DNA from: Octopus sinensis
Taxonomy: Eukaryota
DNA length: 64,000 nt
Reading direction: 5' to 3'
Assembly: GCF_006345805.1 (NCBI RefSeq)
Contig: NC_043023.1
Location: 8,122,001 to 8,186,000, forward strand
The position numbers and the translations under genes were made by a program. Under the pieces are notes generated by a model, which saw only the letters and a program-made list of their open reading frames with translations, ran no database searches and was not told where the DNA came from. Below are positions 6,157 to 51,185 of the stretch, one piece after another; position 1 is the stretch's first letter; every line of letters starts with the position of its first letter.

Positions 6157-6823
6157 TAATGATGTGTAGGGCACTGCCCATGGGCTCATCGTAGACAACA
6201 TGAAGACAGGGACCTTCACTGCTGGATAGCTAGCGAGCTGGTCCAGAAAAGGGAATTCCGGTTGGGCAACATGAAGTCTTAAATCAAACATTTTTCTGAA
6301 AGGTAAAGGTGAAGTGTGTAGTGAACTTGTGTGGGTATACCAATGTTTCAATGCCTCTATGAACTCTGACCCCTGAAAACATTGACATTAAATGGCTGAC
6401 AGTGTTCATGTTGTAATATTTACAATGTTGAATTACTATGTCACTTAACTATCCTCTTTATCTTACTGCTTCTTTTTCTATTTCAGAATATCACATCATG
6501 TTGACATGAAAGAAATTACTTCATTCAGATATGCCTTTGATATTTCTATCAACTAAAGGAAGATGATATATTTATAAGGAGCATTCATCTATATATCAAC
6601 GTTTCTATATAAATATAATCTTGTCTGCAATGTAGAGGAGGTGATTGCTTTACATATTTGGATAACTTTACAAACGAGTTGACAGTTTTCACCTGTTGAT
6701 TTAGGTATTAAGTAAGATCACAGAAGAAAGAAAGATTGACATTAAATTATTCTTTGAAAAAGTAATGCAAATGGACACAAACATATTCATAGAAAAGAAG
6801 AAAACAATATTATTGTGATATAT

Positions 6824-7903
6824 ATGACAAATTATCCTGTCATAATGAATAATTTAACTGAACCTAAAAACCCTGATACAAGAGAGAAACTATATTTCTG
6901 TGATGTCTGTGGTGAATCATTCTCTCGAAGAAATCACTTGACTATTCACAAGTGTATTCATACAGGAGAGAAGCCATATCATTGTAATATCTGTGGTGAA
7001 TCATTCTCTGAAAATGGCAGTTTAACTAAACACAAACGCATTCATACAGGAGAGAAGCCATTTCATTGTAAGGTCTGTGGCAAATCATTCATTGAAAGTG
7101 GTAACTTGAATAAGCACAAGCGTGTTCATACAGGAGAGAAGCCATTTCATTGTAATATCTGTGGTAAATCATTCTCTGAAAATGGCAGTTTAACTAGACA
7201 CAAACGCATTCATACAGGAGAGAAGCCATTTCATTGTAACATCTGTGGTATATCATTCATTGAAAGTGGTCACTTGAATACACACAAGCGCATTCATACA
7301 GGGGAGAAGCCATATCATTGTAATATCTGTGGTGAATCATTTTCTCTAAAGAGCACTTTAACTCAACATAAACGTATTCATACAGGAGAAAAACCATATC
7401 ATTGTGATATCTGTGGTAAATCATTCTCTCGAAGTAATGGCTTAATTAAACACCAGCACGTTCACACTGGAGAGAAACCATATCATTGTGATATCTGTGG
7501 TAAGTCATTCTCTCGTAGTGGCCGCTTGTCTGATCATAAACGTATTCATACTGGGGAAAAGCCATATCAGTGTGATATCTGTGGTAAATCATTTGCTGAA
7601 AATAGCTATTTAATTATTCACAAACGTATTCATACAGGAGAGAAGCCATATCATTGTGATATCTGTGGTAAATCATTCTCTCGCAGTGGCCACTTTTCTG
7701 ATCATAAACGCATTCATACAGGGGAAAAGCCATATCATTGTGATATCTGTGCTAAATCATTCTCTCGCAGTAGTCAATTGTGTAGACATAAACGCATTCA
7801 TAATGGGGAAAAACCATATCATTGTGACATCTGTGGTAAATCATTCTCTGAAAGTGGTGTCCTAACTAAACACCAGTGCAGGATAGAAACCATATCATCG
7901 TGA
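6824..7903 (+). CDS. C2H2 zinc-finger protein ZNF-A (11 complete fingers plus a truncated 12th)
   Basis: Open frame of CxxC..HxxxH units with TGEKP linkers; first ATG 6824; frame ends after an 8-bp deletion in finger 12. Confidence 0.9.
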   Translation: MTNYPVIMNNLTEPKNPDTREKLYFCDVCGESFSRRNHLTIHKCIHTGEKPYHCNICGESFSENGSLTKHKRIHTGEKPFHCKVCGKSFIESGNLNKHKRVHTGEKPFHCNICGKSFSENGSLTRHKRIHTGEKPFHCNICGISFIESGHLNTHKRIHTGEKPYHCNICGESFSLKSTLTQHKRIHTGEKPYHCDICGKSFSRSNGLIKHQHVHTGEKPYHCDICGKSFSRSGRLSDHKRIHTGEKPYQCDICGKSFAENSYLIIHKRIHTGEKPYHCDICGKSFSRSGHFSDHKRIHTGEKPYHCDICAKSFSRSSQLCRHKRIHNGEKPYHCDICGKSFSESGVLTKHQCRIETISS

Positions 7904-10191: not shown

Positions 10192-10549
10192 CTATATATA
10201 TATATAAAGCTGAAGTTGTCTGTGTATGGCAGGTTTGGTAGCCTTCAAATAACACTATCTCCTCTGAGATCCTGCAGCGCAAGTTGGCCAAACTTGAGAG
10301 TTTGATAAAAGAAGGCTTACTCTCCATTCCATAAAGGAAAAAATTAAAATCGGACCATGTTAACACCAAAAATTATTTACATCACAAAGGTACTTTTTCT
10401 CTATGAAAATCCCTATTTTTTACGATTTTTTGACTGCTGTGTCGTCATTTTTCGGTGTATTTCAACAAGAAAAATGTTCACTTAAAGAGGATAACAAGCT
10501 ACATAATGCAAAATTTTTACATTTCAAAAATTCCAATATATACTGCTAG
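10192..10549 (+). mobile_element. Non-autonomous Helitron (3' hairpin deleted)
   Basis: (TA)nAAAGCTGAAGTTGTC start and CTGCTAG|T end; same family as 22936-23333, 53168-53557 and 54111-54530. Confidence 0.7.
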
Positions 10550-14819: not shown

Positions 14820-15592
14820 GTATTTGTGTGTGTGTGTATGTTTTTGTGTCTGTGTTTGTCTCCCCAACATTGCTTGACAACCGATGCTGGTGTGTTTACG
14901 TGCCCGTAACTTAGCGGTTCAGCAAAAGCAACGAATAGAATAAGTACTAGGCTTCCAAACAATAAGTCCTGGGTCGATTTGCTTGACTGTATGGCGGTGC
15001 TCCAGCATGGTCACAGTCAAGTGTCTGAAACAAGTAAAAGAGTAAAAGTTGTGTAGGTATGCCAGTCTTTCAATGCTTCAATGAACTCCGACCCTTGCGA
15101 ACATTGACATTAAACGGATGACAGTATTGATGTTGTAAAATTTGCAATGTTGAATTATTATGTCACTTAACTATTCTCTTTATCTCACTGTTTCTTTTCC
15201 TCTTTCAGAATATCAGATCATGTTGACATAAAAGAAATCTTGTCGTTCAGATGTGATTTCGATATTTTTATCAACTTTCATCAACTAAAGGAAGACAATA
15301 TATTTATAAGGAGCCTTCATCAATACATCAACCTTTTTATATTGATATAATCTATGACAAACAACGGCAAAATATTTTTCTTGTCTTCACTGTCTGGAAT
15401 GTAGAGGAGGTGATTGCTTTACAAGTTTGGATAACTTTACGAAGGACCTGACAGTTTTCACCTGCTAATTCAGATATTAAGTAAGATCACAGCTGAAAAA
15501 CATAGCATTAAATTATTCCCTGACAATACTAACTGAACTGAACACAAACATATTCATAGAAAAGAGAAAAAAACAATATCTTTGTGATATAT

Positions 15593-16750
15593 ATGACAAA
15601 CTATTCTCTCAGAATGAATAATTTAATAAAATCTAAAAATCCTGATACCAGTGAGAAATCATATTCCTGTGATGTCTGTGGAAAATCATTCTCTCGAAGA
15701 ACTCACTTGACCATTCACAGATGTATTCATAATGGTGAAAAGCCATATCAGTGTGATATCTGTGGTAATTCATTCTCTTGTAATAGTCAATTGACTAATC
15801 ATAAACGTATTCATACTGGAGAGAAGCCATATCAGTGTGATATTTGTGGTAAATCATTTTCTGAAACTTGCAATTTAACTGTTCATAAGCGTACACATAC
15901 AGGAGAGAGGCCATATCATTGTGATATCTGTGGCAAATCATTCACTGCAAACAGTCATTTTACTAAACACAAGCGCGTTCATACAGGAGAGAAACCCTAT
16001 CGTTGTGATATTTGTGGAAAATTATTTTCTCAGAGAAGTCACTTGTCTGTTCACAAACGTACACATACAGGAGAGAAGCCATATCAGTGTGATATCTGCG
16101 GTAATTCATTCTTTTGTAATAGTCAGTTGACTACTCATAGACGTATTCATACTGGTGAAAAACCGTATGCCTGCGATTTATGTGATAAATCATTTTCTCA
16201 AATTAATGCTTTAACTAGACACAAACGTGTTCATAATGGTGAGAAGCCATATCATTGTGATATCTGTGGTAAATCATTATCTGCAAACGGTAACTTGTCG
16301 ATTCACAAACGCATTCATACTGGGGAAAAACCATATCACTGTGATATCTGTGGTAAATCATTTTCTGAAAATAGCACTTTAACTAAACACAAGCGTGTTC
16401 ATACAGGAGAGAAACCATATCGTTGTGATATCTGTGGCAAGTCTTTTTCTCTCAATAGCGCTTTAACTAGTCACAAACATATTCACACAGGTGAGAAACC
16501 ATATCGCTGTGATATCTGTGGTAAATCATTTTCTGAAAATAGCACTTTAACTATTCACAAGCGTATTCATACAGGTGAGAAGCCATATCAATGTATTATC
16601 TGCGGTAAATCATTTTCAGAAAATGGTCTCTTGACTAGACACAGACGTATTCATACTGGGGAAAAACCATATCAGTGTGATATCTGTGGTAAATCATTCT
16701 CACGAAAATTCCACTTAAGTAGACATATGAGTATACACACACAAGTGTGA
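15593..16750 (+). CDS. C2H2 zinc-finger protein ZNF-B (13 intact fingers)
   Basis: Uninterrupted ORF with 13 CxxC/HxxxH units ending SIHTQV*; acceptor TTTCAG at 15208. Confidence 0.93.
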
Positions 16751-19454: not shown

Positions 19455-20150
19455 TAATGATGTGTAGGGCACTGCCCATGGGCTCATCGTAGACAGCATG
19501 AAGACAGGGACCTTCACTGCTGGATAGCTAGCGAGCTGGTCCAGAAGAGGGAATTCCGGTCGGGCAACATGAAGTCTTAAATCAAACATTTTTCTGAAAG
19601 GTAAAGGTGAAGTGTGTAGTAAACTTGTGTGGGTATACCAATGTTTCAATGCCTCAATGAACTCTGACCCCTGTAAACATTGACATTAAATGGCTGACAG
19701 TGTTCATGTTGTAATATTTACAATGTTGAATTACTATGTCACTTAACTATCCTCTTTATCTTACTGTTTCTTTTTCTATTTCAGAATATCACATCATGAT
19801 GACATGAAAGAAATTACTTCGTTCAGATATGCCTTTGATATTTTTATCATCTAAAGGATGACGATATTTTTATAAGGAGCATTCATCTATACATCAACGT
19901 TTCTATATAAATATAATCTATGACAAACAACAGCAGAATATTTTTCTTGTCTGGAATGTAGAGGAGGTGATTGCTTTACAAGTTTGGATAACTTTACAAA
20001 CGAGTTGACAGTTTTCACCTGTTGATTTAGGTATTAAGTAAGATCACAGAAGAAAGAAAGATTTACATTAAATTATTCTTTGAAAAAATTAATGCAAATG
20101 GACACAAACATATTCATAGAAAAGAAAAAAACAATATTAATGTGATATAT

Positions 20151-21514
<1,364 letters not shown>

Positions 21515-28403: not shown

Positions 28404-31400
28404 TTAAGCTGGGTTTCTGACGCCCACCTTTTTTTCCACTTCCTTCCATCTTTTCTCATACACACCCCGTGGTAAGATCCTCTTTTCCAGCCCCATTTTG
28501 CTCTTCAGATGATATCTGAAGTAAGTGAGCAAGCCGGGGCCCGAGACAAAGGATCCTATCGCGACTCCTTCCATTCTTGTTCGCCACATGCATTCTTTTA
28601 CTACTGCAACCGTGCAGTGAAAACATGCCTCACCCTCCTTCGAGAGTCCAGTTGGCGGTATCATCTTAATCATAGACTCAGCCGACAGCTGTACTCGTCC
28701 CAGATGCGATAACACGTGTTCTGCGTAACTTATCAAGTCGGACAACTTCCGACAGTGTACAAAAGCGTGCTGGACGGTTTCATCGTCCAACTCGCACCTT
28801 GGACACGTCGGTGGCACTGAAATTCCGTGCCGCGATAACTTCTCGCGAACAGGTAAAGCATTCCTATAGCACTGCCAGGCCAGGGATCTTTGGAAATTAT
28901 CCAAGTACCCCGTCCCGAAAGTCTTTTTAAACAGGTTGATAAGCTGGTCTTCGTCAAACTCCAGAGCCCCTCCTAGGACGTCGTCGTTCTTTGCCTCTAC
29001 CAGCCTTCTATAAAATACCGAGGTGGTATTTCCGCAGCCGGCCTTGCCCGCCTTGTGGATCAGCGTGAGTGCCTGTCGGCACTCCTTTTGCCATGAAGTC
29101 AGTTTCCATCTTTTGATGAGACCGGGTTTAAAATTCACTAAGGAGGCCGGTCTCGGGAAAAATCCCCCTGCCAGCGGACTCCACATCTTATCACCCTCCA
29201 GGTGGTGCCAGAGATGCTTCAGCCTCAATGCATGTCTGCGCATCATCAACCAAGGCATTCCTAACCCACCCTTTAACGGTTCCTGGCAGCAAACGGAGCG
29301 CCTCACAAGTGGCTTTCCTCCCTTCCACAAAAAGCGGAAAAGGATTCGCTCCAACTTGCTAAGCCATGAATAGGGGCAAGGGACAACGGTCAGGCGGTAA
29401 GTGATTACAGATGCAATGAACATCTGCACCACCTCCGCCCTTCCTTTCAAGGACAGAAACCTTCGGGACCAGGTCCGTACTATGGCCTCCACCTTGCTCG
29501 TCACCTCACTCCAGTTCCTCTCCGTTTGGGAGTCTGGCCCAAACCAAACTCCTAGCAACTTAACAGGGCCATCCGTCCAGTGTCCCACGACACTGGACGA
29601 TATCGACTTGCTCCTCCAGGTGCCGAGGCACAAGCCAACCGACTTGTCCTTGTTAACCTTTGCTCCTGCCACCGCCTCGTATCCTCTGATAGCCTCTTCC
29701 ACACAAGGTAGCTGGGCCTCATTGGACACGATGAGGGTGACGTCATCCGCATAAGCAGTAACCGTCCTCCCACCTCCGATCTCATCCGAGTTACTTCCCA
29801 GCCTCTCCAACTTTCGCAGCAATGGCTCAAGAGCCAACACGTACAAAAGTGGTGACAAGGGGCACCCTTGACGAACTGAACATTCGATCGAAAACGGTTC
29901 CGTTAGGTAACCGTTTATCTGGACGGTGGACTTGATGCCGCTATACATAGCAGAGATCCACCCGTGAAATTCAGGGCCCAGTCCAGCCGCTTCGAGGACC
30001 GTCGCCAGGTACTCATGGTCTACCCTATCGAACGCTTTACTTTGGTCTAAATGGACCATTACCCCGCCCTTGCCGGTTAATTTACCCACCCTATCTAAGG
30101 TGTAGCGTATAAGGTGAAGGTTGTCCTGGATCGACCTGCCTGGAATTGCACATGTCTGTGCTCTCCCTACAAGTTTCTCCACGACAACCGTCAACCTTTT
30201 TGCCAACACCTTGGCCAGAATCTTTAACTCTACATTAAGTAGAGTTATGGGCCTGTAGTTACTAATGTTATCCCCCTTGCTCGGGTCTTTCTGGATTAGC
30301 GTCACCACTCCCCGGCTTACAGAACTGGGAATTCTCCCATTCTGCTGCCAGTTCGTGTAGACGCCTGCCAATATTCCCCCGAACAAGTCCGGCATACTTT
30401 GGTAAAACTCGTAGGGCAGACCATCCAACCCCGGCGCATCCGGCCAGTATCCCCTCTATCTCCGCGGGAGTGATCACTTCTTCACAGCACTCCACCTCAC
30501 GCCCCGAGAGCCGCGGTCCGCCGGCCAGGAAGTCCTTTAAGGTCCTCTCCCGCTCCGGCGCCACACCACTCCCGAACCCGCGGGCGAAATGCTGGTGAAG
30601 AAACTTTTGCATCTCCTCCTGTCCATAGATCTTTTGTCCCTGTTCGTCAGTTAAAGACTTGATTGAGGCTTTGTTACCTCTCTGACTCTCCACTCGACGG
30701 GCCCATCCGGCAACGTTAATACCTTCTCGTTTCCCAGCGCGTAGCTTAGCTCTGACTCTGCAACCTTCGTGTTTGGAGTTAAGGTGACGGTACAATACCG
30801 TCCTTGCCGCCATCACTCCGGATGCAGAGCCAGCTTCCATTGCCTCGTTTAGATTCTTAACTAAATCGTCCTCTATCCTAGACCTATCTATCCTTAGCTG
30901 ATTGCTAAATCTAATGGACTCTGAATGAATGGCTCTTTTGAGGGAGTGCCACCATCTATTGTTAATGATGGTGCCACACAATGCCCTCTGTACTAACACC
31001 TTAATCCGGGTACGGAAGTCTTCACAATTCAAAATAGCCTTGTTCAGCTTCCAGTACCCGGGTCCCTGTCTATGACACTTGTCTAATTGTATCCTACACG
31101 TCACAAATTTGTGATCCGTGTAAGGCACAATGTGAAATTGTGGACAACTAAACGTATCCTTATCTCTTTTCTTAATAAATATCCTATCTAGATACGATCT
31201 GTGTGAGCCGTCGTTGTTACTCCACGTCCACTGTGGAACGCTCGGCTCATCCAGTCGGTAACGGTCCACTAGATCAAAGCTCTCTAGTAGACCCTTGAGG
31301 CTAGGGTTCCCCTTCCTATTGGTTGAGCCGACACTGTCGACCCGCGCTTCAAGGACAGTGTTAAAGTCCCCTACTAGGATTACTGTTTTCGACGTCGCTA

Positions 31401-31779
31401 AAAAGGGCTCCAGGTTCCGAAAAAAACCCTTCTGTCTACCCTCATTCGGGGCGTAGACAGCTACCAACCTGAAGGACTGTTTACTTACGTGAGTCACATC
31501 CAGAACAACCAGCCTGCCTTCTGGGTCCAGAAAGACAGTACTTACCTGCAAGTCCAAGCTCTTCCTGATAAGGACTGCCACGCCTCTGCCTCTTCCTCGG
31601 CTAGGAGAAATAAATTTCTCGAACCCATTTAGAAGAGGCGAGAACACTTGGGCCTCGCTCATCTTGGACTCGGTTGCAATAGCTATGTCTACTCCATGTG
31701 TCGTGAGGTCGTTCAGGAAACAAATTTGTTTCCGTTTCGACCCCATTCCACGTACATTCACACAACCCAGCTTAGCCAT
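28404..31779 (-). pseudogene. Tx1 ORF2 (endonuclease and reverse transcriptase) with one frameshift at ~30430
   Basis: NVRG, GDFN, SYLDRIF, TDH (APE); SKAFDRV, RQGCPLSP, YADD (RT); CPRC..ETVQHAFVHC; the K(S/T)PG motif before LDGLPYEFY is disrupted. Confidence 0.9.
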
Positions 31780-31806
31780 TGTCGGTGAGAGAAAAAATAA
31801 ATGAAC

Positions 31807-33240
31807 TTACGGTTGAGAAAGGGAGCATGACAGTTTGAATCTGCCCGCTTCCCCTTCTTCCTCCCTTGTGGTCGTGGCTGCAGGGCTCTTAACCGGCGTT
31901 GCCACCGGGCTCTGGGTGGGTGTGGTTGCCGGGGTTATAACGAGTTTACCCTCCAGAACTTCTTTTGTCACATCTCTAATCAGTCTGTTCTTTAGATGTT
32001 CTTGAAGAACTTCCTCCTTCCACTCGTCTTCCTTTATTTTCGCGAAGCGAGTGGTTGCTTTTATGTCTGTAGCCTTGCTATATAATTTAAATTTTGAAAA
32101 TTTATAGTATTTATATACCCTTTCATTTTTCTCATCAAAAGCGATGATCTTATCATTTTTTTTTAAAGACTTTTTCACATCTTGTTTTATGGGGAGGGGC
32201 TTGGCGAACTGTTTCCCAATGAAAACAGTGCCATGGGGGTAGGGCTGGGGGATTTGTTTCGTGTGTATGTCTGCGGTGCTTGCTGATTTTTTCCTTGTTT
32301 GGGGAGGGGAGTCCAGGGTGTTGTCTTTTTTTCTTTTGTGTGTTACCTGTGTGTAGTCCATGTGTTCGGTACAATCCGTTTCTGTTTCTATGCTTGTCGT
32401 CGTCTTGTTATCCTTTTCTGCCTTCTCCCCTTCAGTGTTTGAAGCACTTTGAGGAGGGGCTTCATTGGTTTTCTTCTTTTTTATGCAGTTCGAGCGGACG
32501 TGACCCTTCTCTCCACATTTAAAACATCTCGGTCTGCGTCCCTCTACTGATACTCTCATTGATGTTCCATCTTCGTTGAATATCCTATCGGGTAGGTTCT
32601 CTAATATCTTGTTTTCCGCCTGAACGAGGAGCTCCAGCGTCTGTCCCTTCCAGCGTACCTCCTCTTTCCTTCTCATCTGCAGAATCGAAATTTCCCACTC
32701 TATATTGTGCAGGACCGCTGCTGCTACCCACATTATATCGTACCCTCTCGGTATGTCCTCTATCAGCAGTTTCGCTGTTCTTTTTCCCATGTACGAGGGT
32801 AGCAGCACGATCTCATCATTTTTCAGGGTCAATGATGACACCTCTCTTGCTATCTCCGCCGAGTCAAAATGTGCCTCAACAGTAGCGCTGCGCGCACCTC
32901 GAACGACATGGCGAATTTTGTCCCACACCGGGGACAAGCACTTTTCGACCATTTCGTTCCTGACGTCCATAATTTTCTTTTCTTTGTAGCTATACACTTT
33001 ATATATGACTGTTTTCTCCTTTATTTCTTGTACCTTCGCCTGCGGCGGTACAAGTTTGACTTCGTTTCCTTCCATTTTTACCAAGTTCCTGAATTCGAAC
33101 AGTTGTTCGATCTTGAATTCAACGTCCATCATGGTTCTGCCTACCGCGGCCGAAAAAGACTGTTTGGTTACTTCCGTTTCCTTTAATTCACTTGTTCCCA
33201 TCGCGGGGAAGTCATTCTTCGACGCCAAGTCGAAATCCAT
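31807..33240 (-). CDS. Tx1 ORF1 nucleic-acid-binding protein (477 aa)
   Basis: Intact ORF with CFKCGEKGHVRSNC (Cx2Cx4Hx4C), 27 nt upstream of the ORF2 ATG. Confidence 0.85.
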   Translation of the reverse strand: MDFDLASKNDFPAMGTSELKETEVTKQSFSAAVGRTMMDVEFKIEQLFEFRNLVKMEGNEVKLVPPQAKVQEIKEKTVIYKVYSYKEKKIMDVRNEMVEKCLSPVWDKIRHVVRGARSATVEAHFDSAEIAREVSSLTLKNDEIVLLPSYMGKRTAKLLIEDIPRGYDIMWVAAAVLHNIEWEISILQMRRKEEVRWKGQTLELLVQAENKILENLPDRIFNEDGTSMRVSVEGRRPRCFKCGEKGHVRSNCIKKKKTNEAPPQSASNTEGEKAEKDNKTTTSIETETDCTEHMDYTQVTHKRKKDNTLDSPPQTRKKSASTADIHTKQIPQPYPHGTVFIGKQFAKPLPIKQDVKKSLKKNDKIIAFDEKNERVYKYYKFSKFKLYSKATDIKATTRFAKIKEDEWKEEVLQEHLKNRLIRDVTKEVLEGKLVITPATTPTQSPVATPVKSPAATTTREEEGEAGRFKLSCSLSQP

Positions 33241-38217: not shown

Positions 38218-38430
38218 GATTCAGTGAAACTGGATATTGGGAATCATAAGAAAATAACACCATTGCTGGAAGCCGTCTCCAGGGCCCACCTCAGAATTAT
38301 CCGTAAACTTATTATACAGGGTGCAAATATTAATGCTGTCGACAATGATGGCAATAATTGTTTGCACCTCTCCATAATAAAGAAAGAGATGTTCCATTCT
38401 GAGGTGGAACCCATTCCCATTTTAGATGAG
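38218..38430 (+). CDS. ANK-RING-DD gene exon b (ankyrin repeats)
   Basis: AAAG|GAT..GAG|GTAAGT; 213 nt, phase 0-0; TPLLEAV..H..IIRKLI.QGANINAVDNDGNNCLHL. Confidence 0.9.
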
Positions 38431-40519: not shown

Positions 40520-40698
40520 TGCTGCAAAGAGCTCCAACTGGACATGGATAGGAGGCTCTCTGGAATAGTAGTTTTGAGTTACCTTGCCAGCCAAGGAGCC
40601 AGCTTATACCATCGTAATAAGAAGAAGAAAGTGACCCCATTGGACTGCATAGAAAATCAACATTTGAAAGAAAAATTACAAACATTTTTACAATCACT
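40520..40698 (+). CDS. ANK-RING-DD gene exon c (degenerate last ankyrin repeat and linker)
   Basis: TTTGCAG|TGC..CT|GTAAGT; phase 0-2; LSYLASQGASLYHRNKKKKVTPLD. Confidence 0.82.
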
Positions 40699-41687: not shown

Positions 41688-41830
41688 GTGTTGGTTTTGT
41701 CAAGAGAAAAAGGCTACTGTCACACTCCATCCATGTCAACATACCGTTATTTGTCAGAATTGCTGTTCTCAAATGACATTTAAGCAATGCCCCATATGTC
41801 GACAACACATACTCCAGAAAAGTGGATTTG
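41688..41830 (+). CDS. ANK-RING-DD gene exon d (C3HC4 RING finger)
   Basis: CTACAG|G..TTTG|GTAAG; phase 2-1; CWFC..PCQH..CQNC..CPIC. Confidence 0.9.
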
Positions 41831-42678
41831 GTAAGAACATTCTTTCTTGATCTGTCTGTTGTCTCATTAACTTTCTGGTATGGAATAATGCACTTCATGT
41901 TGTAGTGGAGACATGCAACTCCTTGTTTGTAACTATATATGATTAACACTTGTTATAATGTTTGCCATCCTTTTAGACATTTTATACTCACACTCGTTAG
42001 TTTTTAGATGTGATTAATGCTAAAAGAGACATTGTTTTCTGACTCTTTCACCTTTTGGCTTTACTTTTGAGTTGATTCGTTTTAATTCGAACATGAAGCC
42101 TGGTCATTGCTCCAAGGTGGTATCAGAAAGTTCACGGACTAGTTCTGTAGCATGCCAACAGATGGCAGCACACCGTTTCGCGCACAGTGAGAGCTAGCAA
42201 TGACTTTCACGAGGCAGTGTGCTGGGTGACACCACTGCGTTTACTTCAAAAGTTGTGAAATTTGTGCTTTTGTGGTCATTTGTAGGCTGTAGTCTGCAAT
42301 TTTCTAATGGGCAGGAACAAGTAACCAATGTGAAATTTCGCGTTAGACTTGTCCAGCAAAACATAACAAAGAAACAACAAAACTAAGAGAAAAAGAGTGT
42401 TATGAAGTGATAACTAAGTGAGAGAATTTCAGAATTGTTAGATTAGTATATAGGATGTCTCAAGAGAAAGATGAGATTTAGAAAGGTTTACCCATTTTGT
42501 TCTGGTTGTAAATATTGAACTATTATATAGTAACAGCTTAGAAAGTGTTGACCGAAAGCATAGTGGTCACCAATTGACTATTGATGATATGAATGCCTTA
42601 CAATAATGGAATATAGATTATTAAAAGAGACAAAGAAATTTTACTATGAAGTATAAAACTTTGAAATGCTTATTTCAG

Positions 42679-43227
42679 TGTGTCCAAAGTTTGAAGAGAA
42701 AGCAGTCCAGACGGTTGCAGAGTCTGTTGGTGAGTATAAAATAACTGTAATTGATTTCTATAAATTTTACCTTCACCTGAAATATATTATTTGTGTGAAT
42801 GTCTGAGAACAGGTTCCATTCTTAGTTTCCAATTCTTATTTCAGTGTGTCCAAGGTGTAGAGAAAAAGCAGTCAAGACGGTTGTAGAATCTTTTGGTGAG
42901 TATAAAATAACTGTAATTGATTTCTATAAATTTTACCTTCACCTGAAATATATTATTTGTGTGAATGTCTGAGAACAGGTTCCATTCTTAATTTCCAATT
43001 CTTATTTCAGTGTGTCCAAGGTGTAGAGAAAAAGCAGTCAAGACGGTTGTAGAATCTTTTGGTGAGTATAAAATAACTGTAATTGATTTCTATAAATTTT
43101 ACCTTCACCTGAAATATATTATTTGTGTGAATGTCTGAGAACAGGTTCCATTCCTAATTTCCAATTCTTATTTCAGTGTGTCCAAAGTGTGAAGAAAAAG
43201 CAGTCAAGACGGTTGTAGAGTCTGTTG
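42679..43227 (+). CDS. Four 51-nt phase-1 micro-exons (42679-42729, 42845-42895, 43011-43061, 43177-43227) in a 166-bp tandem repeat
   Basis: Each unit has TATTTCAG|exon|GTGAGT and a 115-nt intron; peptides VCPKFEEKAVQTVAESV, VCPRCREKAVKTVVESF (twice), VCPKCEEKAVKTVVESV. Confidence 0.75.
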
Positions 43228-43647
43228 GTGAGTATAAAATAACTGTAATTGATTTCTATAAATTTTACTTTCACCTGAGATATATTGTTTGTGTGAATGA
43301 CTGAGAACAGGTTGTAGGAAAGAAAAGACACAATGAAGAGAAAAACAGTGTTATCAAGTGATAATTGAATGAGATATTCACAGAAATGTTAGATTATGTA
43401 GGCTGTCTTAATAGAGAGAGAAAAGGGGAAGAATTTAGGAAGGTTAGTCTATTTTGTGGTGGTCCTGAATAATGAGCTTTAACATGGTATCACAGCAGAA
43501 AGTATAAAAATATTAGCCAAAACCATAGTGGTCACCAGTTGACCATTGATAATAGGAATGTCTGACAATAATAAAATATAGAATAATAAGAAAAATAATT
43601 AAAAAAATTTAACTATATATTGTAAAACTTTTAAATATTTATTTCAG

Positions 43648-43719
43648 AGAGTTTAAATTTGGAGGAAAACCGCTCCCATAGCACATCGAAGAAGGTGGCA
43701 GTTAAGCAACAGCAAGTTG
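43648..43719 (+). CDS. 72-nt phase-1 exon, diverged copy of the death-domain first exon
   Basis: TTTCAG|..CAGCAAGTTG|GTGAGT; same length and ending as 47464-47535; no stop codon. Confidence 0.65.
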
Positions 43720-45899
43720 GTGAGTATAAAATAAGTCCGTAAGTGATTTCAAATTAGTTTTACTTCACTTGAGCATATTTTGTTTGTCAGAAGGACTGAG
43801 AACAGGTTCCATTCTTAATTTTCAATTGAAAAATTATCTGTTTAATAATTCTTTTGAAGAAATTACTGAAATTTAAGAGAATGCCCACCAAGGTTAGAAC
43901 AGACAAAAGTTAATGATGTCTTTTGGAATAGAGAACTAAAATATGTTATTTGGTTGGGGGTGAACAAGTGCTTTAACGACAAGGCCTTCGTTTTACATTT
44001 ATACTGTGTTTACTAATAAGTTGTTGTTGTTTTAGCAGGAGTCTCTCATAATCTGGCAGACTTACAATGAAATGCATTTCAAGTGTCAACATCCTGTCTT
44101 TTTGTCACTGATAGGAAATCTATCATTACATCCATTAAACGCATTGTCTTTATCGAAGTAGAAAACACTGGCTTGCTACTGAGATAGCCATTGCTTCTTT
44201 GTTGTTTTTCTCTCTCTCTCGCATTCTCTTTTTGATAGATACTAGCTGCAAGATGCAATAAATGACATTGTCCTCATCATTTATCATCTGATTTCCATGT
44301 TCCTGTGGAATGGATGGTGAGGGGGGGGGGTCACGGTCCAAGTCAGTTCTTATTAGCAGTTACTGTCCACCTTCATTGGTTGAGGATCATGTCCCACTAG
44401 AACATTCCAGCTTTCCTATGATGGTCTGCCCTTCCTAACACCATCCACTTTATAAAGGATCCTGGGTGCATTTTATTGTGGCACAAATACAAGAAAGATT
44501 GTTATGTATTCAACAAAATTAAACGTTCCTCTCTAACTTATGCAAAGAAATATCAGACATGTTGAAAGAAGAAAGGAAAGTAAATGAATTAGAGAGCAGC
44601 TCGTTAAGAAACCTTATGAGGTTACCCGGAAGCTGTTTGCAGATGCTAAGAGTGGCAGGATAAAATGTAATAAATGAAATCCAATTTAGGTATGGTTAGT
44701 GGTCAGTAGGGATAGCTAGAAAAGCTTTTTTAGCTATCCCTACTGACCACAATATATATATATTTAACTTATTTGTTTTATTTTTTACTAATCTGAAATT
44801 TCACCAGTTACAATCTGCTTTATTTTTGCAGCTATTAATCTTGTCCATTTCTGCCAAGGTGATGAACAAGTACCAGTTGTGTACTGGGATTGATGTAATC
44901 AATTAGTCCCCTCCTCTGTAATTGCTGGCCTTGTACCAAAATTTGAAACCAATATTATCCATTCCTGTTCAACTGTTTTCAATTCGCACACTACTACATG
45001 AAACCACAACATGCCATTACGGGTTTATTTCTGCTAGTTATAGGCCTGAATGTCCATGTTAGCTAACTGCAGGTTACTCTCATTGTCAGATGATTAACCT
45101 TGGTCATTACATTGTATCGTTTAAAAAGAAACAATGTTTTAGTAGTTGAATTAAGCTTTTATTATTATTATTATTAATTATTATTATTAACATTCATTCT
45201 CTGAGTTCAGTACCTTCTTGGGTTGACTTTTCATTTCATTCCTCATGGGTCAGTAAAACAATTACAAGTTACATAACATGTCAAACTAATTGACTTCATA
45301 CTCTCTCCTACAGATCTATCCACTTGTATTAATCGAAGAATTCATAATTAGCATTCATTTTTCAAAACCCTCGTTACCACACTATATTGCTGTCCAACTG
45401 AATCATCTCTTCCAATCATATCAAGTAAAACCTTTCGCTTTTCTGTATATTTTGGTGAGACTTCAGTTGGCTTTTTAGTGAGACTGATTGTTTGGTGTTT
45501 TAGAACGTGACCTTTAAACCAAGTATTGAGAAGACGACCCATCAAGCCAAGTAAAATTGCAGTCGTGGCAGATACTGGTGCCGTGCTGGTGGCATGTAAA
45601 AGCACCCATTGCACTCTGGGAATGGTTGGCATTAAGAAGGGCATCCAGCCGTAGAAACCATGCCAAATCAGACTGGAGTCTGATGCAGCCTTCCAACTTG
45701 TCAGCCTCAGTCAAACTGTCCAATCCATGCCAGCATGGACAATGGACGTGAAGTGATGATGATGAACTGGAGGGGCACATACAGGAGATCTACACTGATC
45801 CTAAGTGAGATAATTCATTCCCACTCATGGACAGTTTGAAATGCCCCCAAAAAACCATGAATCAAATCTCAACTTGGTGGTTTCTAGCAGAAACAATTA

Positions 45900-46930
45900 T
45901 ATAGCTGAGTGAAGAAGGCAAAAGCAAAGAGTGACCCAGGAGGTGATGGTGTATCATAGAAAGTATTGTACACAATTATGTTATAAGCTGTACTTAAAGA
46001 GTTGTGGCATAAAGGTGAAATGGTTGATGAGTAGTACAAAGCAGAAAAAAATTACTTACCAAAGAAAGCTGAAACAGAACTGATTGAGCAGTTCAGACCC
46101 TTTTCAATCTTGAATGTAGATGGCAAGATTTATATGGGTCCAGTTGCCAAGAGATCAGCTACACATCTCCAAAATAATGACTATGAGACCGAGAGTGTCC
46201 AGGATGCTGGAATTTCCAGAATCACTGGATGGGTAGAACATGATTTTTCAATCTGCAATGCAATACAAGACACAAAGAAGAATAAAAGGGATTTGAACGT
46301 TGTATGACCTGATCTGGTTGATGCTTATGGTTCTGTACCACACAAATTAGTGATGGAACCAATGAACTTCTTTTATATATGAGAGAAGATTAGAGATCTG
46401 GCTAGAAGCTGCTGTAATAATTTCAAAATGTGGTTCCTGACAGAAAATTTCACAACAGACATCGTTTGGAAACTGGAATTGCTGTAGGTTGCACAATATC
46501 AGTCATTTGGTTTGTGCTTGTTATGGAGATGTTACTTAGATCAGCAGATTGATCAGAAGAAATGGCTCGAGTGAAATCACCCAAGAAGGAATTTAAAGGA
46601 TGATATAACAATACTAACAAGAGACCAAAAGGGTATGCAAATAGTTCTGGATTAACTAATTCTTTGATCAAGAATGGGGTTTAAACCAAATAATTAATGC
46701 AGTCATGTGTCAAAAGGTTAGCTGAAGCAAGTGAAGTTCAAAACAGCATACAAAACCATGCCAAGGGTTAAAGAGAAACCTCTAAAATCTATTGGACGAT
46801 GGTATGCTACCTCATTGTCCAGTAAGAGTAGAGACATAGAGGTCATGGCACAAACTGAAGGCAATAGCTAAGACAACATTTCCTGGCAAATAAAAGATTT
46901 GATGCTTCCAGTTTGATCTGTATCCCTGCC
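45900..46930 (+). pseudogene. Decayed RLE-type (HERO-like) non-LTR retrotransposon RT
   Basis: KKAKAKSDPG.DGV, QFRPFSILNVDGKI, DL.DAYGSVPHKL, DDITIL with many stops; clade assigned from recalled motifs. Confidence 0.6.
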
Positions 46931-47463
46931 TTGCTTATAAAATCCTTGAGTATCAGTTTTTATGCAACATTTCAGATTTTTTTACTGCTATAATGTATGG
47001 ATGAACAATTAAATATAGTTAATAAGATTTTGTGAAAGCATAAAGTGTTTGGATACCTGATATGTTTTTGCTCCCCTCTGCCCACCTGGAAAGAAATCTG
47101 CTTCATTAAGAAGTCTTCTAACATCTCAAATACATGTGGCACATATATAAGAAAAAAAAATGAAAACTAAAAGAAAAACAGTGTTATCAAGTGATAATTA
47201 AATGAGATAATTGTAACATTGTTAGATTATTTAAGATGTCTTAATAGAGAAAGGAAATTGAGGAAGGTTAGTCTATTTTGTTGTAGACCTAAGTATTGAG
47301 CTATTTACCTGGTCCCACTGGAGAAAGCATAAAAATGTTGACCAAAAACAGAGTGGTCACCCGATGACCAGCGATGATGACAGGTATGTCCCACTATAAT
47401 AAAATATAGATTATTAATAAAGAATTTTTACTCAAGTATAACAGTTGCAAATATTTATTTCAG

Positions 47464-47535
47464 AAACTCCAAAGTTAGAGGAGAAGTGTCTCCAAGATGT
47501 TGCAAAACTGTTAGGAGTCGACTGGCAGCAAGTTG
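47464..47535 (+). CDS. ANK-RING-DD gene, death-domain exon 1
   Basis: TTTCAG|..GTTG|GTGAGT; ETPKLEEKCLQDVAKLLGVDWQQV joins GRNLGI of the last exon. Confidence 0.85.
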
Positions 47536-48842
47536 GTGAGTATAAAATAACAGTACTTAATTGATTTCAATAAGTGTCAGCTTTTGTTTGTCAGCATGAC
47601 TAAGAGAAGATCCCATTCCTACTTTCCAATTGAAAGGCTAGCTGTAAAGTGATTCTATTAAAGGTGTTGGTATTACTGAAACATCATAAAATAGCCACCG
47701 AGATTAGCGGGGTCAGTAAAATGGCTAAATTAGAGGACACAATTGATTTAATATTGTCTTTTGAGAGAGCAAATTAAGATATGTCATTTAAGGGTAAACT
47801 GGTGAGTTAATGATAATTTTTTTTTTGTTTGTTTTACATTTTTACTAAGTTTACATTTTGTTGTTTTTTCTTTGCAAAATGCTTGTTTTAATCAGAAATA
47901 CGATGGAAAGTGTTTCAGGTGGGACATCTCTGTCTTTCAGTTGGTAGTACAGGACTACATCATTAAGTGCATCCTTTTTTACATGCTCCTGTGTATAGTG
48001 AGTGGCATGTTGCAGTCACTCCAGTGTCCATTTAGTTGTGAACCACTCTTCACTGACATGTAATGCTTGATTGTACGTAGGTGGATGGTGTTTATGTTGG
48101 TGATTCCTCTCTTCTTTCCTGCAAGTTAAAACTCTCCTCTTTGCTTGGTTTAACTTAACACCTCTCTATTACACTGAGTAACAACGATTTTTGTCCATGG
48201 ATAACAATTGTTATTTCCTAGAAAATACGAGAATGGCTAGTATCTCCTTCAAACTTTGCTTTCGTCACAATATATACCTTGTAGACCTCACACATTTCAG
48301 CTGATGTTGTTTCACAGTGATTTTATGCTGTTGTCTTGATAAATTCACCACAGACACAGCAGAATGTATCTGCCAGATGCTTACAACCTCTTGATGCCAT
48401 CTGTGATGAATGCAGTTCTTGGATAGTTAGAAATAAACTGAACTGGTGATCTTATGATCCCTTTTTTTACACTGGTATCTATGTTGCCAGAACGTTCTAG
48501 AAATTCTTGGAAATTTTAGTAACTTCTTGATTATAGTTCTAGAAATTTCTAGAAAATTCTGCTTCAGTGACTCAGCACTGAATCTGTCTGGAAATAGGTT
48601 TCAAAACATTGATGTCCAGGTGACAAAAGCAACATTTGAAGGGAACAGATGTCCTTTCCTTTGATTTCTTGATGGAAATAAATAGGAAATAACACTTAAC
48701 TTATCAAAGACAACAAAAAATTAAAAGTTTGTTAAGCAGTGTTATTGATTTCTCTCTAAATCATGTTCTTGAACCATTCAAAGAGATCCTTATTATGAGT
48801 CATGAACCCATGTTGTCTACCAAAATGTGTTATACTTTTGTA

Positions 48843-50075
48843 TTGGGTCATCCCATAAGTAATGCAGTGTTTTCAATTGTATGAACTAAAAGTCGGAGGG
48901 GGATGGGATAAACTACCTGCATCAACTTGCTATAAAAGCAGTACCTTGTACTTATTCTTAGTGTGAGTTTTGAAGAGTGCAGTTAAATTTTAACAGTTAT
49001 TTTTTCAAAGCTATAATGGAAGTGACAAAGGAGCATATTCGACATATTTTGCTTTATGAGTTCAGTAAAAGCAACAATGCAACAGAAAGTGCGAGGAATA
49101 TTAATGCAGTATATGGGGATAGGACAATAAGTGTAAGCCAGTGTCAATGGTGGCTCCAGAAGTTCCGAGCTGGAAACTACAGCCAAGAAGATCAACTTTG
49201 TTCTGGAAGATATGTAGAGCTTGACGAGGACATCCTGCAAACCCTGGTGGAACAAAATCCCATTGTAACTAGCAGAGAAGCTTGGATTTGGTCATTCAAC
49301 CATTCATCGATACTTGCATGGTATTGGAAAAATCAGCAAATTGGGTCAATGGATTGCGCACAGAGTAAATGTGTGCTCTTCTCTGCTGCCATGTCTCATG
49401 AATGAACCTCTTTTGAACTGAATAGTGACTGGTGATGAGAAAAGGGTTCTCTATAAATACGTTATTCACCAAAGACAGTGGGTAGGGAAAGGAGAAATAC
49501 TGGCACTCCAGAATAAAAAAGGTCTCTACCCATGTAAGGTGCTGTTATCTGTTTGGTGGGATATGAAAGGTTTGGTCCACTTTGAACTTTTAAACCCTAA
49601 CCAAATGATAACAAAGGAGATCTACTGCGAGCAGCTTGAGTGGCTTAAGTCAGTGCTAGAAGAAAAATGACCATCTTTGGTTCCAAGATGACAGGTGTTC
49701 TTCGATCAGGATAATGCTTGGCCACATACAGCAAGGATGACATTCCAAAGGCTGGAGCAGTTTGAATGAGAAACAATTCCCCACCCACCATATTGCCTCA
49801 TCCGATTATCCTTTATTCTGCAGTCTTCAAAATCATTTGGACAGAAAAAAATATGAATTCTGTAGATGCAGGCAGAACAGTAGTGGAGGAATATTTTTCA
49901 TCACGGACAAGTCAGTTTTGGAAGAGGGGCCTTGCAAGTGCGCCAGATAGATGGAAGAGCATTGTAGAAAATGAAGGAGAGTATATTTTAGGTTAAAAAA
50001 GAACTTTGTTTATCTTAATTTTGAAGAATAAAAGATGTATAAAACAAATGCATTATTATTTATAGGATGACCCAA
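48843..50075 (+). mobile_element. Mariner (DD34D) transposon relic
   Basis: TIR TTGGGTCATCCCATAAGTAATGC with imperfect inverse ending at 50075; flanks TA and TG; transposase 49016-49996 with IVTGDEK, LSVWWD, DNA.PH, SSDY.LF broken by stops and frameshifts. Confidence 0.92.
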
Positions 50076-50979: not shown

Positions 50980-51185
50980 GCAGGAATTTAGGAATCAGAA
51001 ATATCAAACTGGGGAATATCAGGCATGACTATCCTTTTAACACTGAAGAGCAGGGCTTCCAGATGCTGCACACATGGTACACAAGTTGTGATCCAGAGAG
51101 ACGAACACTCAAAACACTCAGAAAAGCTCTTGAGGAAGCTGAATGCTTTGAGGCACTTCAATGTCTACCATCAGAAGAAAAGTGA
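50980..51185 (+). CDS. ANK-RING-DD gene, terminal exon (death domain C-terminal helices)
   Basis: TTTGCAG|GC phase 1; GRNLGIRNIKLGNIRHDYP.NTEEQGFQMLHTW..TLKTLRKALEEAEC; TGA at 51183-51185. Confidence 0.85.

What the first reader, a model, noticed from the sequence alone, without database searches (positions are those of the whole stretch)
42370..47790. Micro-exon array built from repeated duplication of a death-domain exon
Between the RING exon and the death domain lie six phase 1-1 exons with intact AG/GT sites. Four are 51-nt exons inside a 166-bp tandem repeat, so the repeat unit is exon plus intron; two are 72-nt exons. The 51-nt peptides (VCPKFEEKAVQTVAESVG) align with DD helix 1 (ETPKLEEKCLQDVAKLLG). 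About 300 bp of upstream intron and the downstream intron are homologous in three blocks (~42370, ~43325, ~47160). Seen in sequence: splice sites, frame and homology. Inference: the DD first exon was serially duplicated, truncated and amplified as a minisatellite, giving a linker whose length can vary by exon skipping or repeat number. Three units gained CPxC motifs that could pair into Zn sites or act as decoy DD helices.
Basis: partly seen in the sequence, partly recalled or inferred. Interest (0 to 1): 0.88.

Follow-up and report, generated by a model that had tools for sequence, protein, structure and literature searches.

The report
Octopus E3-ligase linker from duplicated exons
An octopus ubiquitin-ligase gene has copied the first exon of its death domain several times, most recently as a 166-bp exon-plus-intron tandem repeat, which gives a variable-length linker that public gene models already show as optional exons; it is a tidy but not unprecedented case of exon duplication.

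Summary
The window matches Octopus sinensis LOC115225502, an ANK-RING-linker-death-domain gene named 'MIB2-like'. Between the RING exon (41688-41830) and death-domain exon 1 (47464-47535) lie four 51-nt exons inside a 166-bp tandem repeat, plus one 72-nt exon. All are phase 1-1 with AG/GT sites. Three blocks of exon plus about 300 nt of flank are homologous (E 1e-44 to 1e-60).

The duplication model holds. RefSeq isoform X2 is exactly the all-inclusive protein, and isoforms X5-X17 differ by whole units, but no reads were examined. The repeat-number part was measured directly. The O. vulgaris orthologue, 99-100% identical elsewhere, has five units. Paralogues have one to six. An O. bimaculoides relative has five older, dispersed copies.

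I also found that the exon copies have diverged much faster than their own introns, both in the young array and in the old blocks.

AlphaFold gives the whole array pLDDT below 50, so Zn sites or decoy helices get no support.

Verdict: a new member of a known kind (tandem exon duplication, coding VNTR with an exon-plus-intron unit). It is already annotated but not described in the papers searched. Interest is moderate.

The parts
38218..38430 (+). Ankyrin-repeat exon of LOC115225502. A short upstream exon encoding MLAQ was not located.
   Evidence: AG/GT sites and translation match P0022.
40520..40698 (+). Second ANK-region exon; ends in phase 2.
41688..41830 (+). RING exon (zf-C3HC4_3); ends in phase 1.
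   Evidence: Pfam PF13920, 41.4 bits against a cut-off of 27; 100% match to P0022.
42364..42678 (+). Block A upstream flank, homologous to the introns upstream of the 72-nt exon and of DD exon 1.
   Evidence: 72% to block B and 71% to block C over about 330 nt, E 2.5e-49 and 6e-44.
42665..43313 (+). 166-bp tandem repeat, 3.9 copies. Each unit is a 51-nt exon plus a 115-nt intron.
   Evidence: TRF score 1151, 95% matches; unit alignment.
42679..42729 (+). Micro-exon unit 1 (VCPKFEEKAVQTVAESV), phase 1-1.
   Evidence: The peptide is identical in O. vulgaris and O. bimaculoides.
42845..42895 (+). Micro-exon unit 2 (VCPRCREKAVKTVVESF).
43011..43061 (+). Micro-exon unit 3; exon identical to unit 2.
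43177..43227 (+). Micro-exon unit 4 (VCPKCEEKAVKTVVESV).
43315..43960 (+). Block B: the second copy of DD exon 1 with its flanks.
   Evidence: 70% identical to block C over 597 nt, E 2.6e-73.
43648..43719 (+). 72-nt cassette exon (ESLNLEENRSHSTSKKVAVKQQQV), a full-length diverged copy of DD exon 1.
   Evidence: 39/72 identical in register, z=5.4; conserved in paralogues; skipped in isoforms X6 and X13.
47148..47790 (+). Block C: the source copy, DD exon 1 with its flanks.
47464..47535 (+). Death-domain exon 1 (helix 1; ETPKLEEKCLQDVAKLLGVDWQQV).
   Evidence: Pfam Death domain begins here; aligns to the N-terminal start (first residues) of the PIDD and RIPK1 DD chains; AF2 helix from residue 276.
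50980..51185 (+). Death-domain exon 2 with stop codon at 51183-51185.
   Evidence: Pfam PF00531, 35.8 bits against a cut-off of 22.6.

Best explanation
The gene is a truncated member of an Octopus-specific cluster of ANK-RING-death-domain E3 ligases. Its RING-to-DD linker was built by repeatedly duplicating the first death-domain exon together with its splice sites and flanking intron. Because that exon is symmetric (phase 1-1), every copy is an in-frame cassette. Shown: an old duplication gave the 72-nt copy and a second gave a copy that lost 21 nt. A 166-bp piece of that second copy (acceptor + 51-nt exon + about 100 nt of intron) was then amplified by unequal recombination into a minisatellite that still changes copy number. 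Inferred: the cassettes are spliced in combinatorially and encode a disordered, charged spacer of 0 to about 92 residues. That spacer sets the distance between the E2-binding RING and the DD that docks onto death-domain signalling partners. Also inferred: the copies were pushed away from the helix-1 sequence by selection, because they diverged faster than their introns.
For: Exon structure, frames and splice sites are verified. Block homology has E 1e-44 to 1e-73, and exon-level homology beats shuffles. The concatenated exons equal RefSeq XP_036370274.1 apart from its first four residues (MLAQ), whose exon was not located, and isoforms X4-X17 differ by exactly 17 or 24 residues at unit boundaries. 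Copy number is 4 here against 5 in the O. vulgaris orthologue, on a 99-100% identical background. Paralogues have 2 and 5 (one decayed), and proteins with 1, 5 and 6 units exist. O. vulgaris units 2 and 4 are mosaics of types B and C, a sign of recombination. O. bimaculoides L005 has five dispersed 51/54-nt phase 1-1 copies with homologous flanks, and isoforms differing by 17-18 aa. AF2 gives the array pLDDT 24-46 and the domains 80-90. Exon copies diverge faster than introns. Among 11 internal units, 15/51 exon sites vary against 10/113 intron sites (p=0.0017). Between blocks, exons are 49-59% identical against 76-82% for flanks (p<0.006).
Against: No read-level transcript evidence could be examined. 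RefSeq isoforms are models, and near-identical units invite mis-mapping or reverse-transcriptase template switching. One O. vulgaris model (P0009) joins the RING straight to DD exon 2. One unit in a paralogue is frameshifted (49 nt). pN/pS among units is 0.78, so constraint on the peptide is weak. The spacer function is inferred only from disorder prediction with a shallow 16-sequence alignment.
Confidence: 0.78

Rival explanations
1. The cassettes form a hypervariable region under diversifying selection in an expanded innate-immune or cell-death signalling family. Unit number, unit type and splicing would together generate functional diversity, not merely spacing.
For: Exon copies diverge 4-5 times faster than adjacent introns. 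Variable sites are spread evenly over codon positions (5/5/5). The family is a lineage-specific tandem cluster with many paralogues. The DD is closest to the PIDD, RIPK1, TRADD and FADD domains.
Against: pN/pS of 0.78 is not above 1. Synonymous sites are elevated too, which points to mosaic history or gene conversion as much as to selection. The unit 1 peptide is identical across three species, which is conservation rather than diversification. The sample is small and the units are not independent.
Confidence: 0.2
2. Adjacent CPxC units pair to form Zn knuckles (C-x2-C-x13-C-x2-C), or the helix-1-derived peptides act as decoy helices that compete for the death-domain core.
For: Three consecutive CPxC units here, four in the O. 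vulgaris orthologue and in P0030, two in P0014. There are motif-level Pfam hits to CxxC families, e.g. Gin at 31.4 bits.
Against: AF2 predicts no ordered structure for the array. Most units in the family have a single Cys (CPKS or CPKF). The window has an odd number of CPxC units (3), and splicing would break up pairs. The Pfam hits reflect the motif pattern only.
Confidence: 0.08
3. The units are non-functional pseudo-exons. The isoforms would be artefacts of gene prediction, repeat mis-mapping or template switching, and real mRNAs would skip the array.
For: No reads were examined. The O. vulgaris model P0009 skips everything. One unit is decayed. Peptide constraint is weak.
Against: 15 of 16 units in four loci keep the 51-nt length, an open frame and consensus AG/GTGAGT (or GTAAGT) sites. 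Much older copies in O. bimaculoides keep the same phase and sites despite about 30% flank divergence. Two independent annotations, of O. bimaculoides and O. sinensis, both include units.
Confidence: 0.08
4. The repeat is a transposable element or SINE that was exonised.
For: The region is TE-rich: a mariner, a LINE, and degraded reverse-transcriptase-like ORFs at 46035-46900 between blocks B and C that were not confirmed by Pfam.
Against: The blocks occur only three times in 64 kb, all on the + strand and all around homologous exons. The same arrangement is seen only inside this gene family.
Confidence: 0.02

Closest known systems
Tandem exon duplication giving alternatively spliced exons (reviewed in PMC9013439)
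   Same: Homologous neighbouring exons arise by local duplication of an exon plus flanking intron. The copies are in frame and are used alternatively.
   Different: Classic cases (Dscam1, tropomyosin, MHC) are mutually exclusive. Here several copies are included at once, as additive cassettes. Here the youngest copies form a true 166-bp minisatellite with minimal 115-nt introns.
Coding VNTRs whose unit holds whole exons and introns, e.g. human LPA kringle IV-2 (PMC6314250)
   Same: The tandem unit contains exon plus intron, so copy-number change alters protein length in frame.
   Different: The LPA unit is 5.6 kb with two exons encoding a folded domain, and it is polymorphic within a population. 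Here the unit is 166 bp with one 17-residue exon predicted to be disordered. Variation was shown only between species and between paralogues.
Schistosome micro-exon genes (MEGs; PMC10526429)
   Same: Short symmetric exons (3-81 bp) whose skipping produces protein variants.
   Different: MEGs are secreted proteins made almost entirely of micro-exons separated by long introns. Here the micro-exons form one linker inside an intracellular multidomain E3 ligase.
Vertebrate MIB2 (the name given to the family by the annotation)
   Same: Ankyrin repeats followed by a C3HC4_3 RING. MIB2 also acts in death-domain signalling through RIPK1 (PMC5912950).
   Different: No MIB/HERC2 or ZZ domains are listed for these proteins. 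They have a single RING and a C-terminal death domain, which MIB2 lacks.

Membership tests
Death domain (Pfam PF00531) | Profile match above the curated cut-off across the domain, including helix 1. | tested here: met
   35.8 bits against 22.6, profile positions 2-79 of 86. Matches PIDD, RIPK1, TRADD and FADD DDs at E 8e-6 to 1e-3. AF2 gives 5 DSSP helical segments between residues 276 and 358 (the first, 276-301, is a merged long helix), with block-mean pLDDT mostly 83-90 and one block at 74.
RING finger, zf-C3HC4_3 | Profile match above cut-off with the Cys/His ligands. | tested here: met
   41.4 bits against 27. The Cys/His columns are nearly invariant in the family alignment.
MIB2 orthologue | MIB/HERC2 domains, ZZ finger and MIB repeats N-terminal to the ankyrin repeats, with tandem C-terminal RINGs. 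| tested here: not met
   The precomputed Pfam lists for family members contain only Ank, RING and Death families. The window encodes two ANK exons, one RING and a DD.
Tandem exon duplication | Neighbouring exons and their flanks are homologous. | tested here: met
Tandem exon duplication | Copies are symmetric (same phase at both ends), so inclusion keeps the frame. | tested here: met
   All are phase 1-1 with lengths of 51 or 72 nt. O. bimaculoides copies are 51 or 54 nt.
Tandem exon duplication | Copies are alternatively included in mRNA. | not testable with these tools
   Only gene models were available: RefSeq isoforms X2-X17, and O. bimaculoides X1, X2 and a third isoform, differ by whole units. 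No reads were available.
Mutually exclusive exon cluster (Dscam type) | Exactly one exon of the cluster is included per transcript. | tested here: not met
   Models include one to four 51-nt units together (X16 and X17 have one, X2 has four).
Exon-containing VNTR or minisatellite | Head-to-tail unit containing a complete exon and intron. | tested here: met
   TRF period 166 at 95% identity in the window, L003 and L002.
Exon-containing VNTR or minisatellite | Copy number varies between genomes. | tested here: met
   4 units (O. sinensis window) against 5 (O. vulgaris L003), with flanks 99-100% identical. Within-species polymorphism was not tested.
Schistosome-type micro-exon gene | Most of the coding sequence is made of symmetric micro-exons; the product is secreted. 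| tested here: not met
   Micro-exons make up about 92 of 366 residues. The rest is ANK, RING and DD.
Zinc ribbon or knuckle | Four Cys ligands in a conserved, ordered fold. | tested here: inconclusive
   A C-x2-C-x13-C-x2-C pattern exists in units 2-4, but AF2 pLDDT is below 50 and most family units lack the second Cys.

The most novel reading that the evidence does not exclude
The array is a rapidly evolving, copy-number-variable and combinatorially spliced diversity region in an octopus-specific family of death-domain E3 ligases. Selection would keep the exons different while recombination homogenises the introns. That would make it a splicing-based diversification system in a cephalopod cell-death or immune pathway.
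Probability: 0.15. Interest if true: 0.6.

Novelty: new member of a known kind. Interest (0 to 1): 0.38.

Why it matters
It is an unusually clean record of how a protein linker can be made from a domain's own first exon. Every stage is still visible in one 5-kb stretch: the source exon, a full-length diverged copy, a truncated copy, and a minisatellite that is still changing. Related species show both older and younger states. It would make a good teaching or model case for exon duplication, intron-definition splicing of minimal introns, and concerted evolution. It also flags an expanded octopus ANK-RING-DD family that the literature searched here does not describe. It does not open a new category of mechanism.

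Tried and rejected
- **Gapped exon alignment:** a semi-global alignment with harsh penalties gave trivial end alignments for units 2 and 4 and the 72-nt exon. I replaced it with an in-register comparison anchored by the homologous acceptors.
- **Array-only word-indexed protein search:** returned one hit. The exhaustive representative search returned only Octopus family members plus unrelated low-complexity repeats (P0031-P0039, P0041-P0045), which I discarded.
- **Fetching more loci:** attempts to fetch the O. sinensis paralogue loci and the O. bimaculoides locus of P0029/P0066 failed because they are not on record. A cross-species exon-versus-intron test at the true orthologue was therefore not possible.
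- **Rfam:** no RNA family anywhere in the window.
- **TE origin:** rejected.
- **A-to-G excess among variable exon sites:** 9 of 15 variable sites are A/G, a possible RNA-editing link. The exon is purine-rich and the excess is not significant, so I did not pursue it.
- **Literature:** searches for the locus and the family found nothing specific.
Full report
**What is in the sequence**

The region lies in an AT-rich animal genome. On the + strand I verified ten exons with AG/GT boundaries. Joined together, they translate without a stop into an ankyrin–RING–linker–death-domain protein. The exons fall into four groups:
- Two ANK exons, at 38218-38430 and 40520-40698.
- The RING exon, at 41688-41830, ending in phase 1.
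- Four 51-nt exons (42679, 42845, 43011, 43177) and a 72-nt exon (43648-43719).
- Death-domain exon 1 (47464-47535, 72 nt) and death-domain exon 2 (50980-51185).

All six small exons are phase 1-1. Pfam confirms the RING (PF13920, 41.4 bits) and the death domain (PF00531, 35.8 bits), and the domain match begins in the 47464 exon. Tandem Repeats Finder reports a 166-bp period with 3.9 copies at 95% identity at 42665-43313. Each unit is a 51-nt exon plus a 115-nt intron. The only slip is that five exons, not six, lie between the RING and the death domain. The sixth is death-domain exon 1 itself.

**Homology is well beyond chance**

The three blocks start at 42364, 43315 and 47148. Their roughly 315-nt upstream flanks are 71-74% identical (E 6e-44 to 1e-59), and their downstream flanks are also homologous. 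These blocks occur nowhere else in the 64-kb window and only on the + strand. They are therefore local duplicates and not a dispersed element.

With the acceptors as anchor, in-register identity to DD exon 1 is:

| Exon | Identity to DD exon 1 | z |
|---|---|---|
| Unit 1 | 29/51 | 5.0 (none of 20000 shuffles as good) |
| 72-nt exon | 39/72 | 5.4 |
| Unit 2 | 24/51 | 3.3 |
| Unit 4 | 25/51 | 3.6 |

A multiple alignment shows that the 51-nt form is the 72-nt form minus 21 nt near its 3' end. The tandem unit runs from about 10-14 nt before the acceptor to about 100 nt past the donor. The join TTCCAATT|CTTATTTCAG is readable in the sequence.

**Identity of the gene and transcript models**

A protein search with the all-inclusive translation returned Octopus sinensis LOC115225502. 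Other isoforms differ by exactly one or more units:
- X4/X5 lack one of the identical units 2 and 3.
- X8 joins unit 1 to unit 4.
- X10 joins unit 2 or 3 to the 72-nt exon.
- X6 and X13 skip the 72-nt exon.
- X16 and X17 keep a single unit.

So the micro-exons and their skipping are already in public annotation.

I could not inspect reads. These are gene models, and in near-identical repeats mis-mapping or reverse-transcriptase template switching can mimic skipping. One O. vulgaris model (P0009) joins the RING directly to DD exon 2, which would remove helix 1. That may be an annotation error.

**Copy number changes**

The O. vulgaris orthologous locus (L003) is 99-100% identical to the window in every exon and intron tested. 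It nevertheless carries five intact units (TRF 4.9 copies) against four here. Its units 2 and 4 are mosaics of the RCR…ESF and KCE…ESV types seen in the window. That is the signature of recombination or gene conversion between units.

Unit counts elsewhere in the family:
- Paralogue L001 has two units plus the 72-nt exon.
- Paralogue L002 has five units, one of them decayed to 49 nt and frameshifted.
- Protein models have one (P0010), five (P0001) and six (P0030) units.

L002 is also chimeric. It is 96-98% identical to the window up to the array, but only about 70% identical in the death-domain part.

**The duplication habit is old**

O. bimaculoides proteins P0029 and P0066 carry a RING followed by a unit 1 peptide identical to the window's. 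A more distant O. bimaculoides gene (L005) has five dispersed 51- or 54-nt phase 1-1 exons spread over 8 kb. Each has flanks homologous to those of DD exon 1, and its isoforms differ by 17-18 residues. Another O. bimaculoides relative (L004) has none. The exhaustive search of 1.8 billion representative proteins found such arrays only in Octopus proteins.

**Exons diverge faster than their introns**

Among 11 internal units from four loci, the figures are:

| Measure | Exon | Intron |
|---|---|---|
| Variable sites | 15 of 51 | 10 of 113 (Fisher p=0.0017) |
| Mean pairwise difference | 0.126 | 0.023 |

Variable exon sites are spread 5/5/5 over the three codon positions, and pN/pS is 0.78.

The older blocks behave the same way. 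Exon identity is 49-59% against 76-82% for the flanks, with p<0.006 for each pair. Unique introns of the same paralogues differ by only 2-5%. So it is the exons, not the introns, that depart from the baseline.

Two readings fit:
- Selection drove the copies away from the helix-1 sequence, or favoured diversity among them.
- Recombination homogenises introns while exon variants are retained.

The data are few and the units are not independent, so I treat this as a lead rather than a result.

**Structure and function**

AlphaFold2, run with a 16-sequence family alignment, models the ANK, RING and death domains at pLDDT 80-90. It gives residues 183-278, the whole array plus the 72-nt exon, pLDDT 24-46. 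That fits a disordered, charged spacer. It gives no support to Zn knuckles or decoy helices, although a shallow alignment weakens this negative. Most units in the family have a single Cys.

The death domain is closest in sequence to those of PIDD, RIPK1, TRADD and FADD. This places the family in cell-death-type signalling. The 'MIB2-like' name reflects only the ANK and RING similarity. No MIB/HERC2 or ZZ domains are listed for these proteins.

My working model is a variable-length tether between the RING and the DD. This is inference.

**Comparison with known systems and novelty**

The closest known kinds are:
- Tandem exon duplication feeding alternative splicing (PMC9013439).
- Coding VNTRs whose unit contains exons and introns, such as LPA KIV-2 (PMC6314250).
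- Schistosome micro-exon genes, in splicing logic (PMC10526429).

This case differs in three ways: the cassettes are additive rather than mutually exclusive, the unit is very small with a minimal intron, and it derives from a fragment of a folded domain. No paper in the held library mentions the locus or this family feature.

I rate it a new member of a known kind.

Noticed in passing
window 28404-33240, minus strand: A non-LTR retrotransposon with three long open ORFs of 477, 503 and 674 aa. The endonuclease (PF03372) and reverse transcriptase (PF00078 plus zf-RVT) are recognisable. The block is GC-rich (49-50%) against a background of about 35%. It may be a young, possibly active LINE.
   Followed up: partly
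window 48974-49993, + strand (intron between DD exons 1 and 2): A mariner/Mos1-type transposase remnant, with HTH_48 and a partial DDE domain, broken into three ORFs.
   Followed up: partly
window 6758-7900, 15560-16747, 20031-21381, + strand: Three large C2H2 zinc-finger ORFs (12 or more fingers each) upstream of the ligase gene, with repeated flanking sequence. Together they look like a tandem ZNF gene cluster.
   Followed up: partly
window 44699-44750: A perfect 20-nt inverted repeat (GTGGTCAGTAGGGATAGCTA / TAGCTATCCCTACTGACCAC) with a 12-nt loop, inside the intron between blocks B and C. Its origin is unknown.
   Followed up: no
window 55456-55555: A 100-N assembly gap. It is followed by a GC-richer block with strong AT skew (56-58 kb) and then a roughly 1.3-kb TA/TATG-type microsatellite (59.1-60.4 kb).
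   Followed up: no
L002 7846-15900 (O. vulgaris paralogue): A chimeric paralogue. It is 96-98% identical to the window from the ANK exon through the array, but only about 70% identical in the death-domain half, and it lacks the 72-nt copy. The recombination breakpoint seems to lie in or just after the array. The array also holds a frameshifted 49-nt unit at 10512.
   Followed up: partly
L003 (O. vulgaris orthologue), gene model P0009: The deposited O. vulgaris model joins the RING directly to DD exon 2. It omits all five units, the 72-nt exon and DD helix 1. This is likely an annotation error, or else an isoform with an incomplete death domain.
   Followed up: no
window 42679-43227 and the units in L001-L003: Nine of the 15 variable exon sites among units are A/G differences on the coding strand. 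In a heavily RNA-editing animal this raises the question of editing or hard-wiring. However, the exon is purine-rich and the excess is not significant.
   Followed up: no
window 38218 upstream: The gene here has only two ANK-region exons before the RING. Paralogues have many ankyrin repeats (450-563 aa), so it looks like a 5'-truncated duplicate. The short first exon encoding MLAQ was not located.
   Followed up: no
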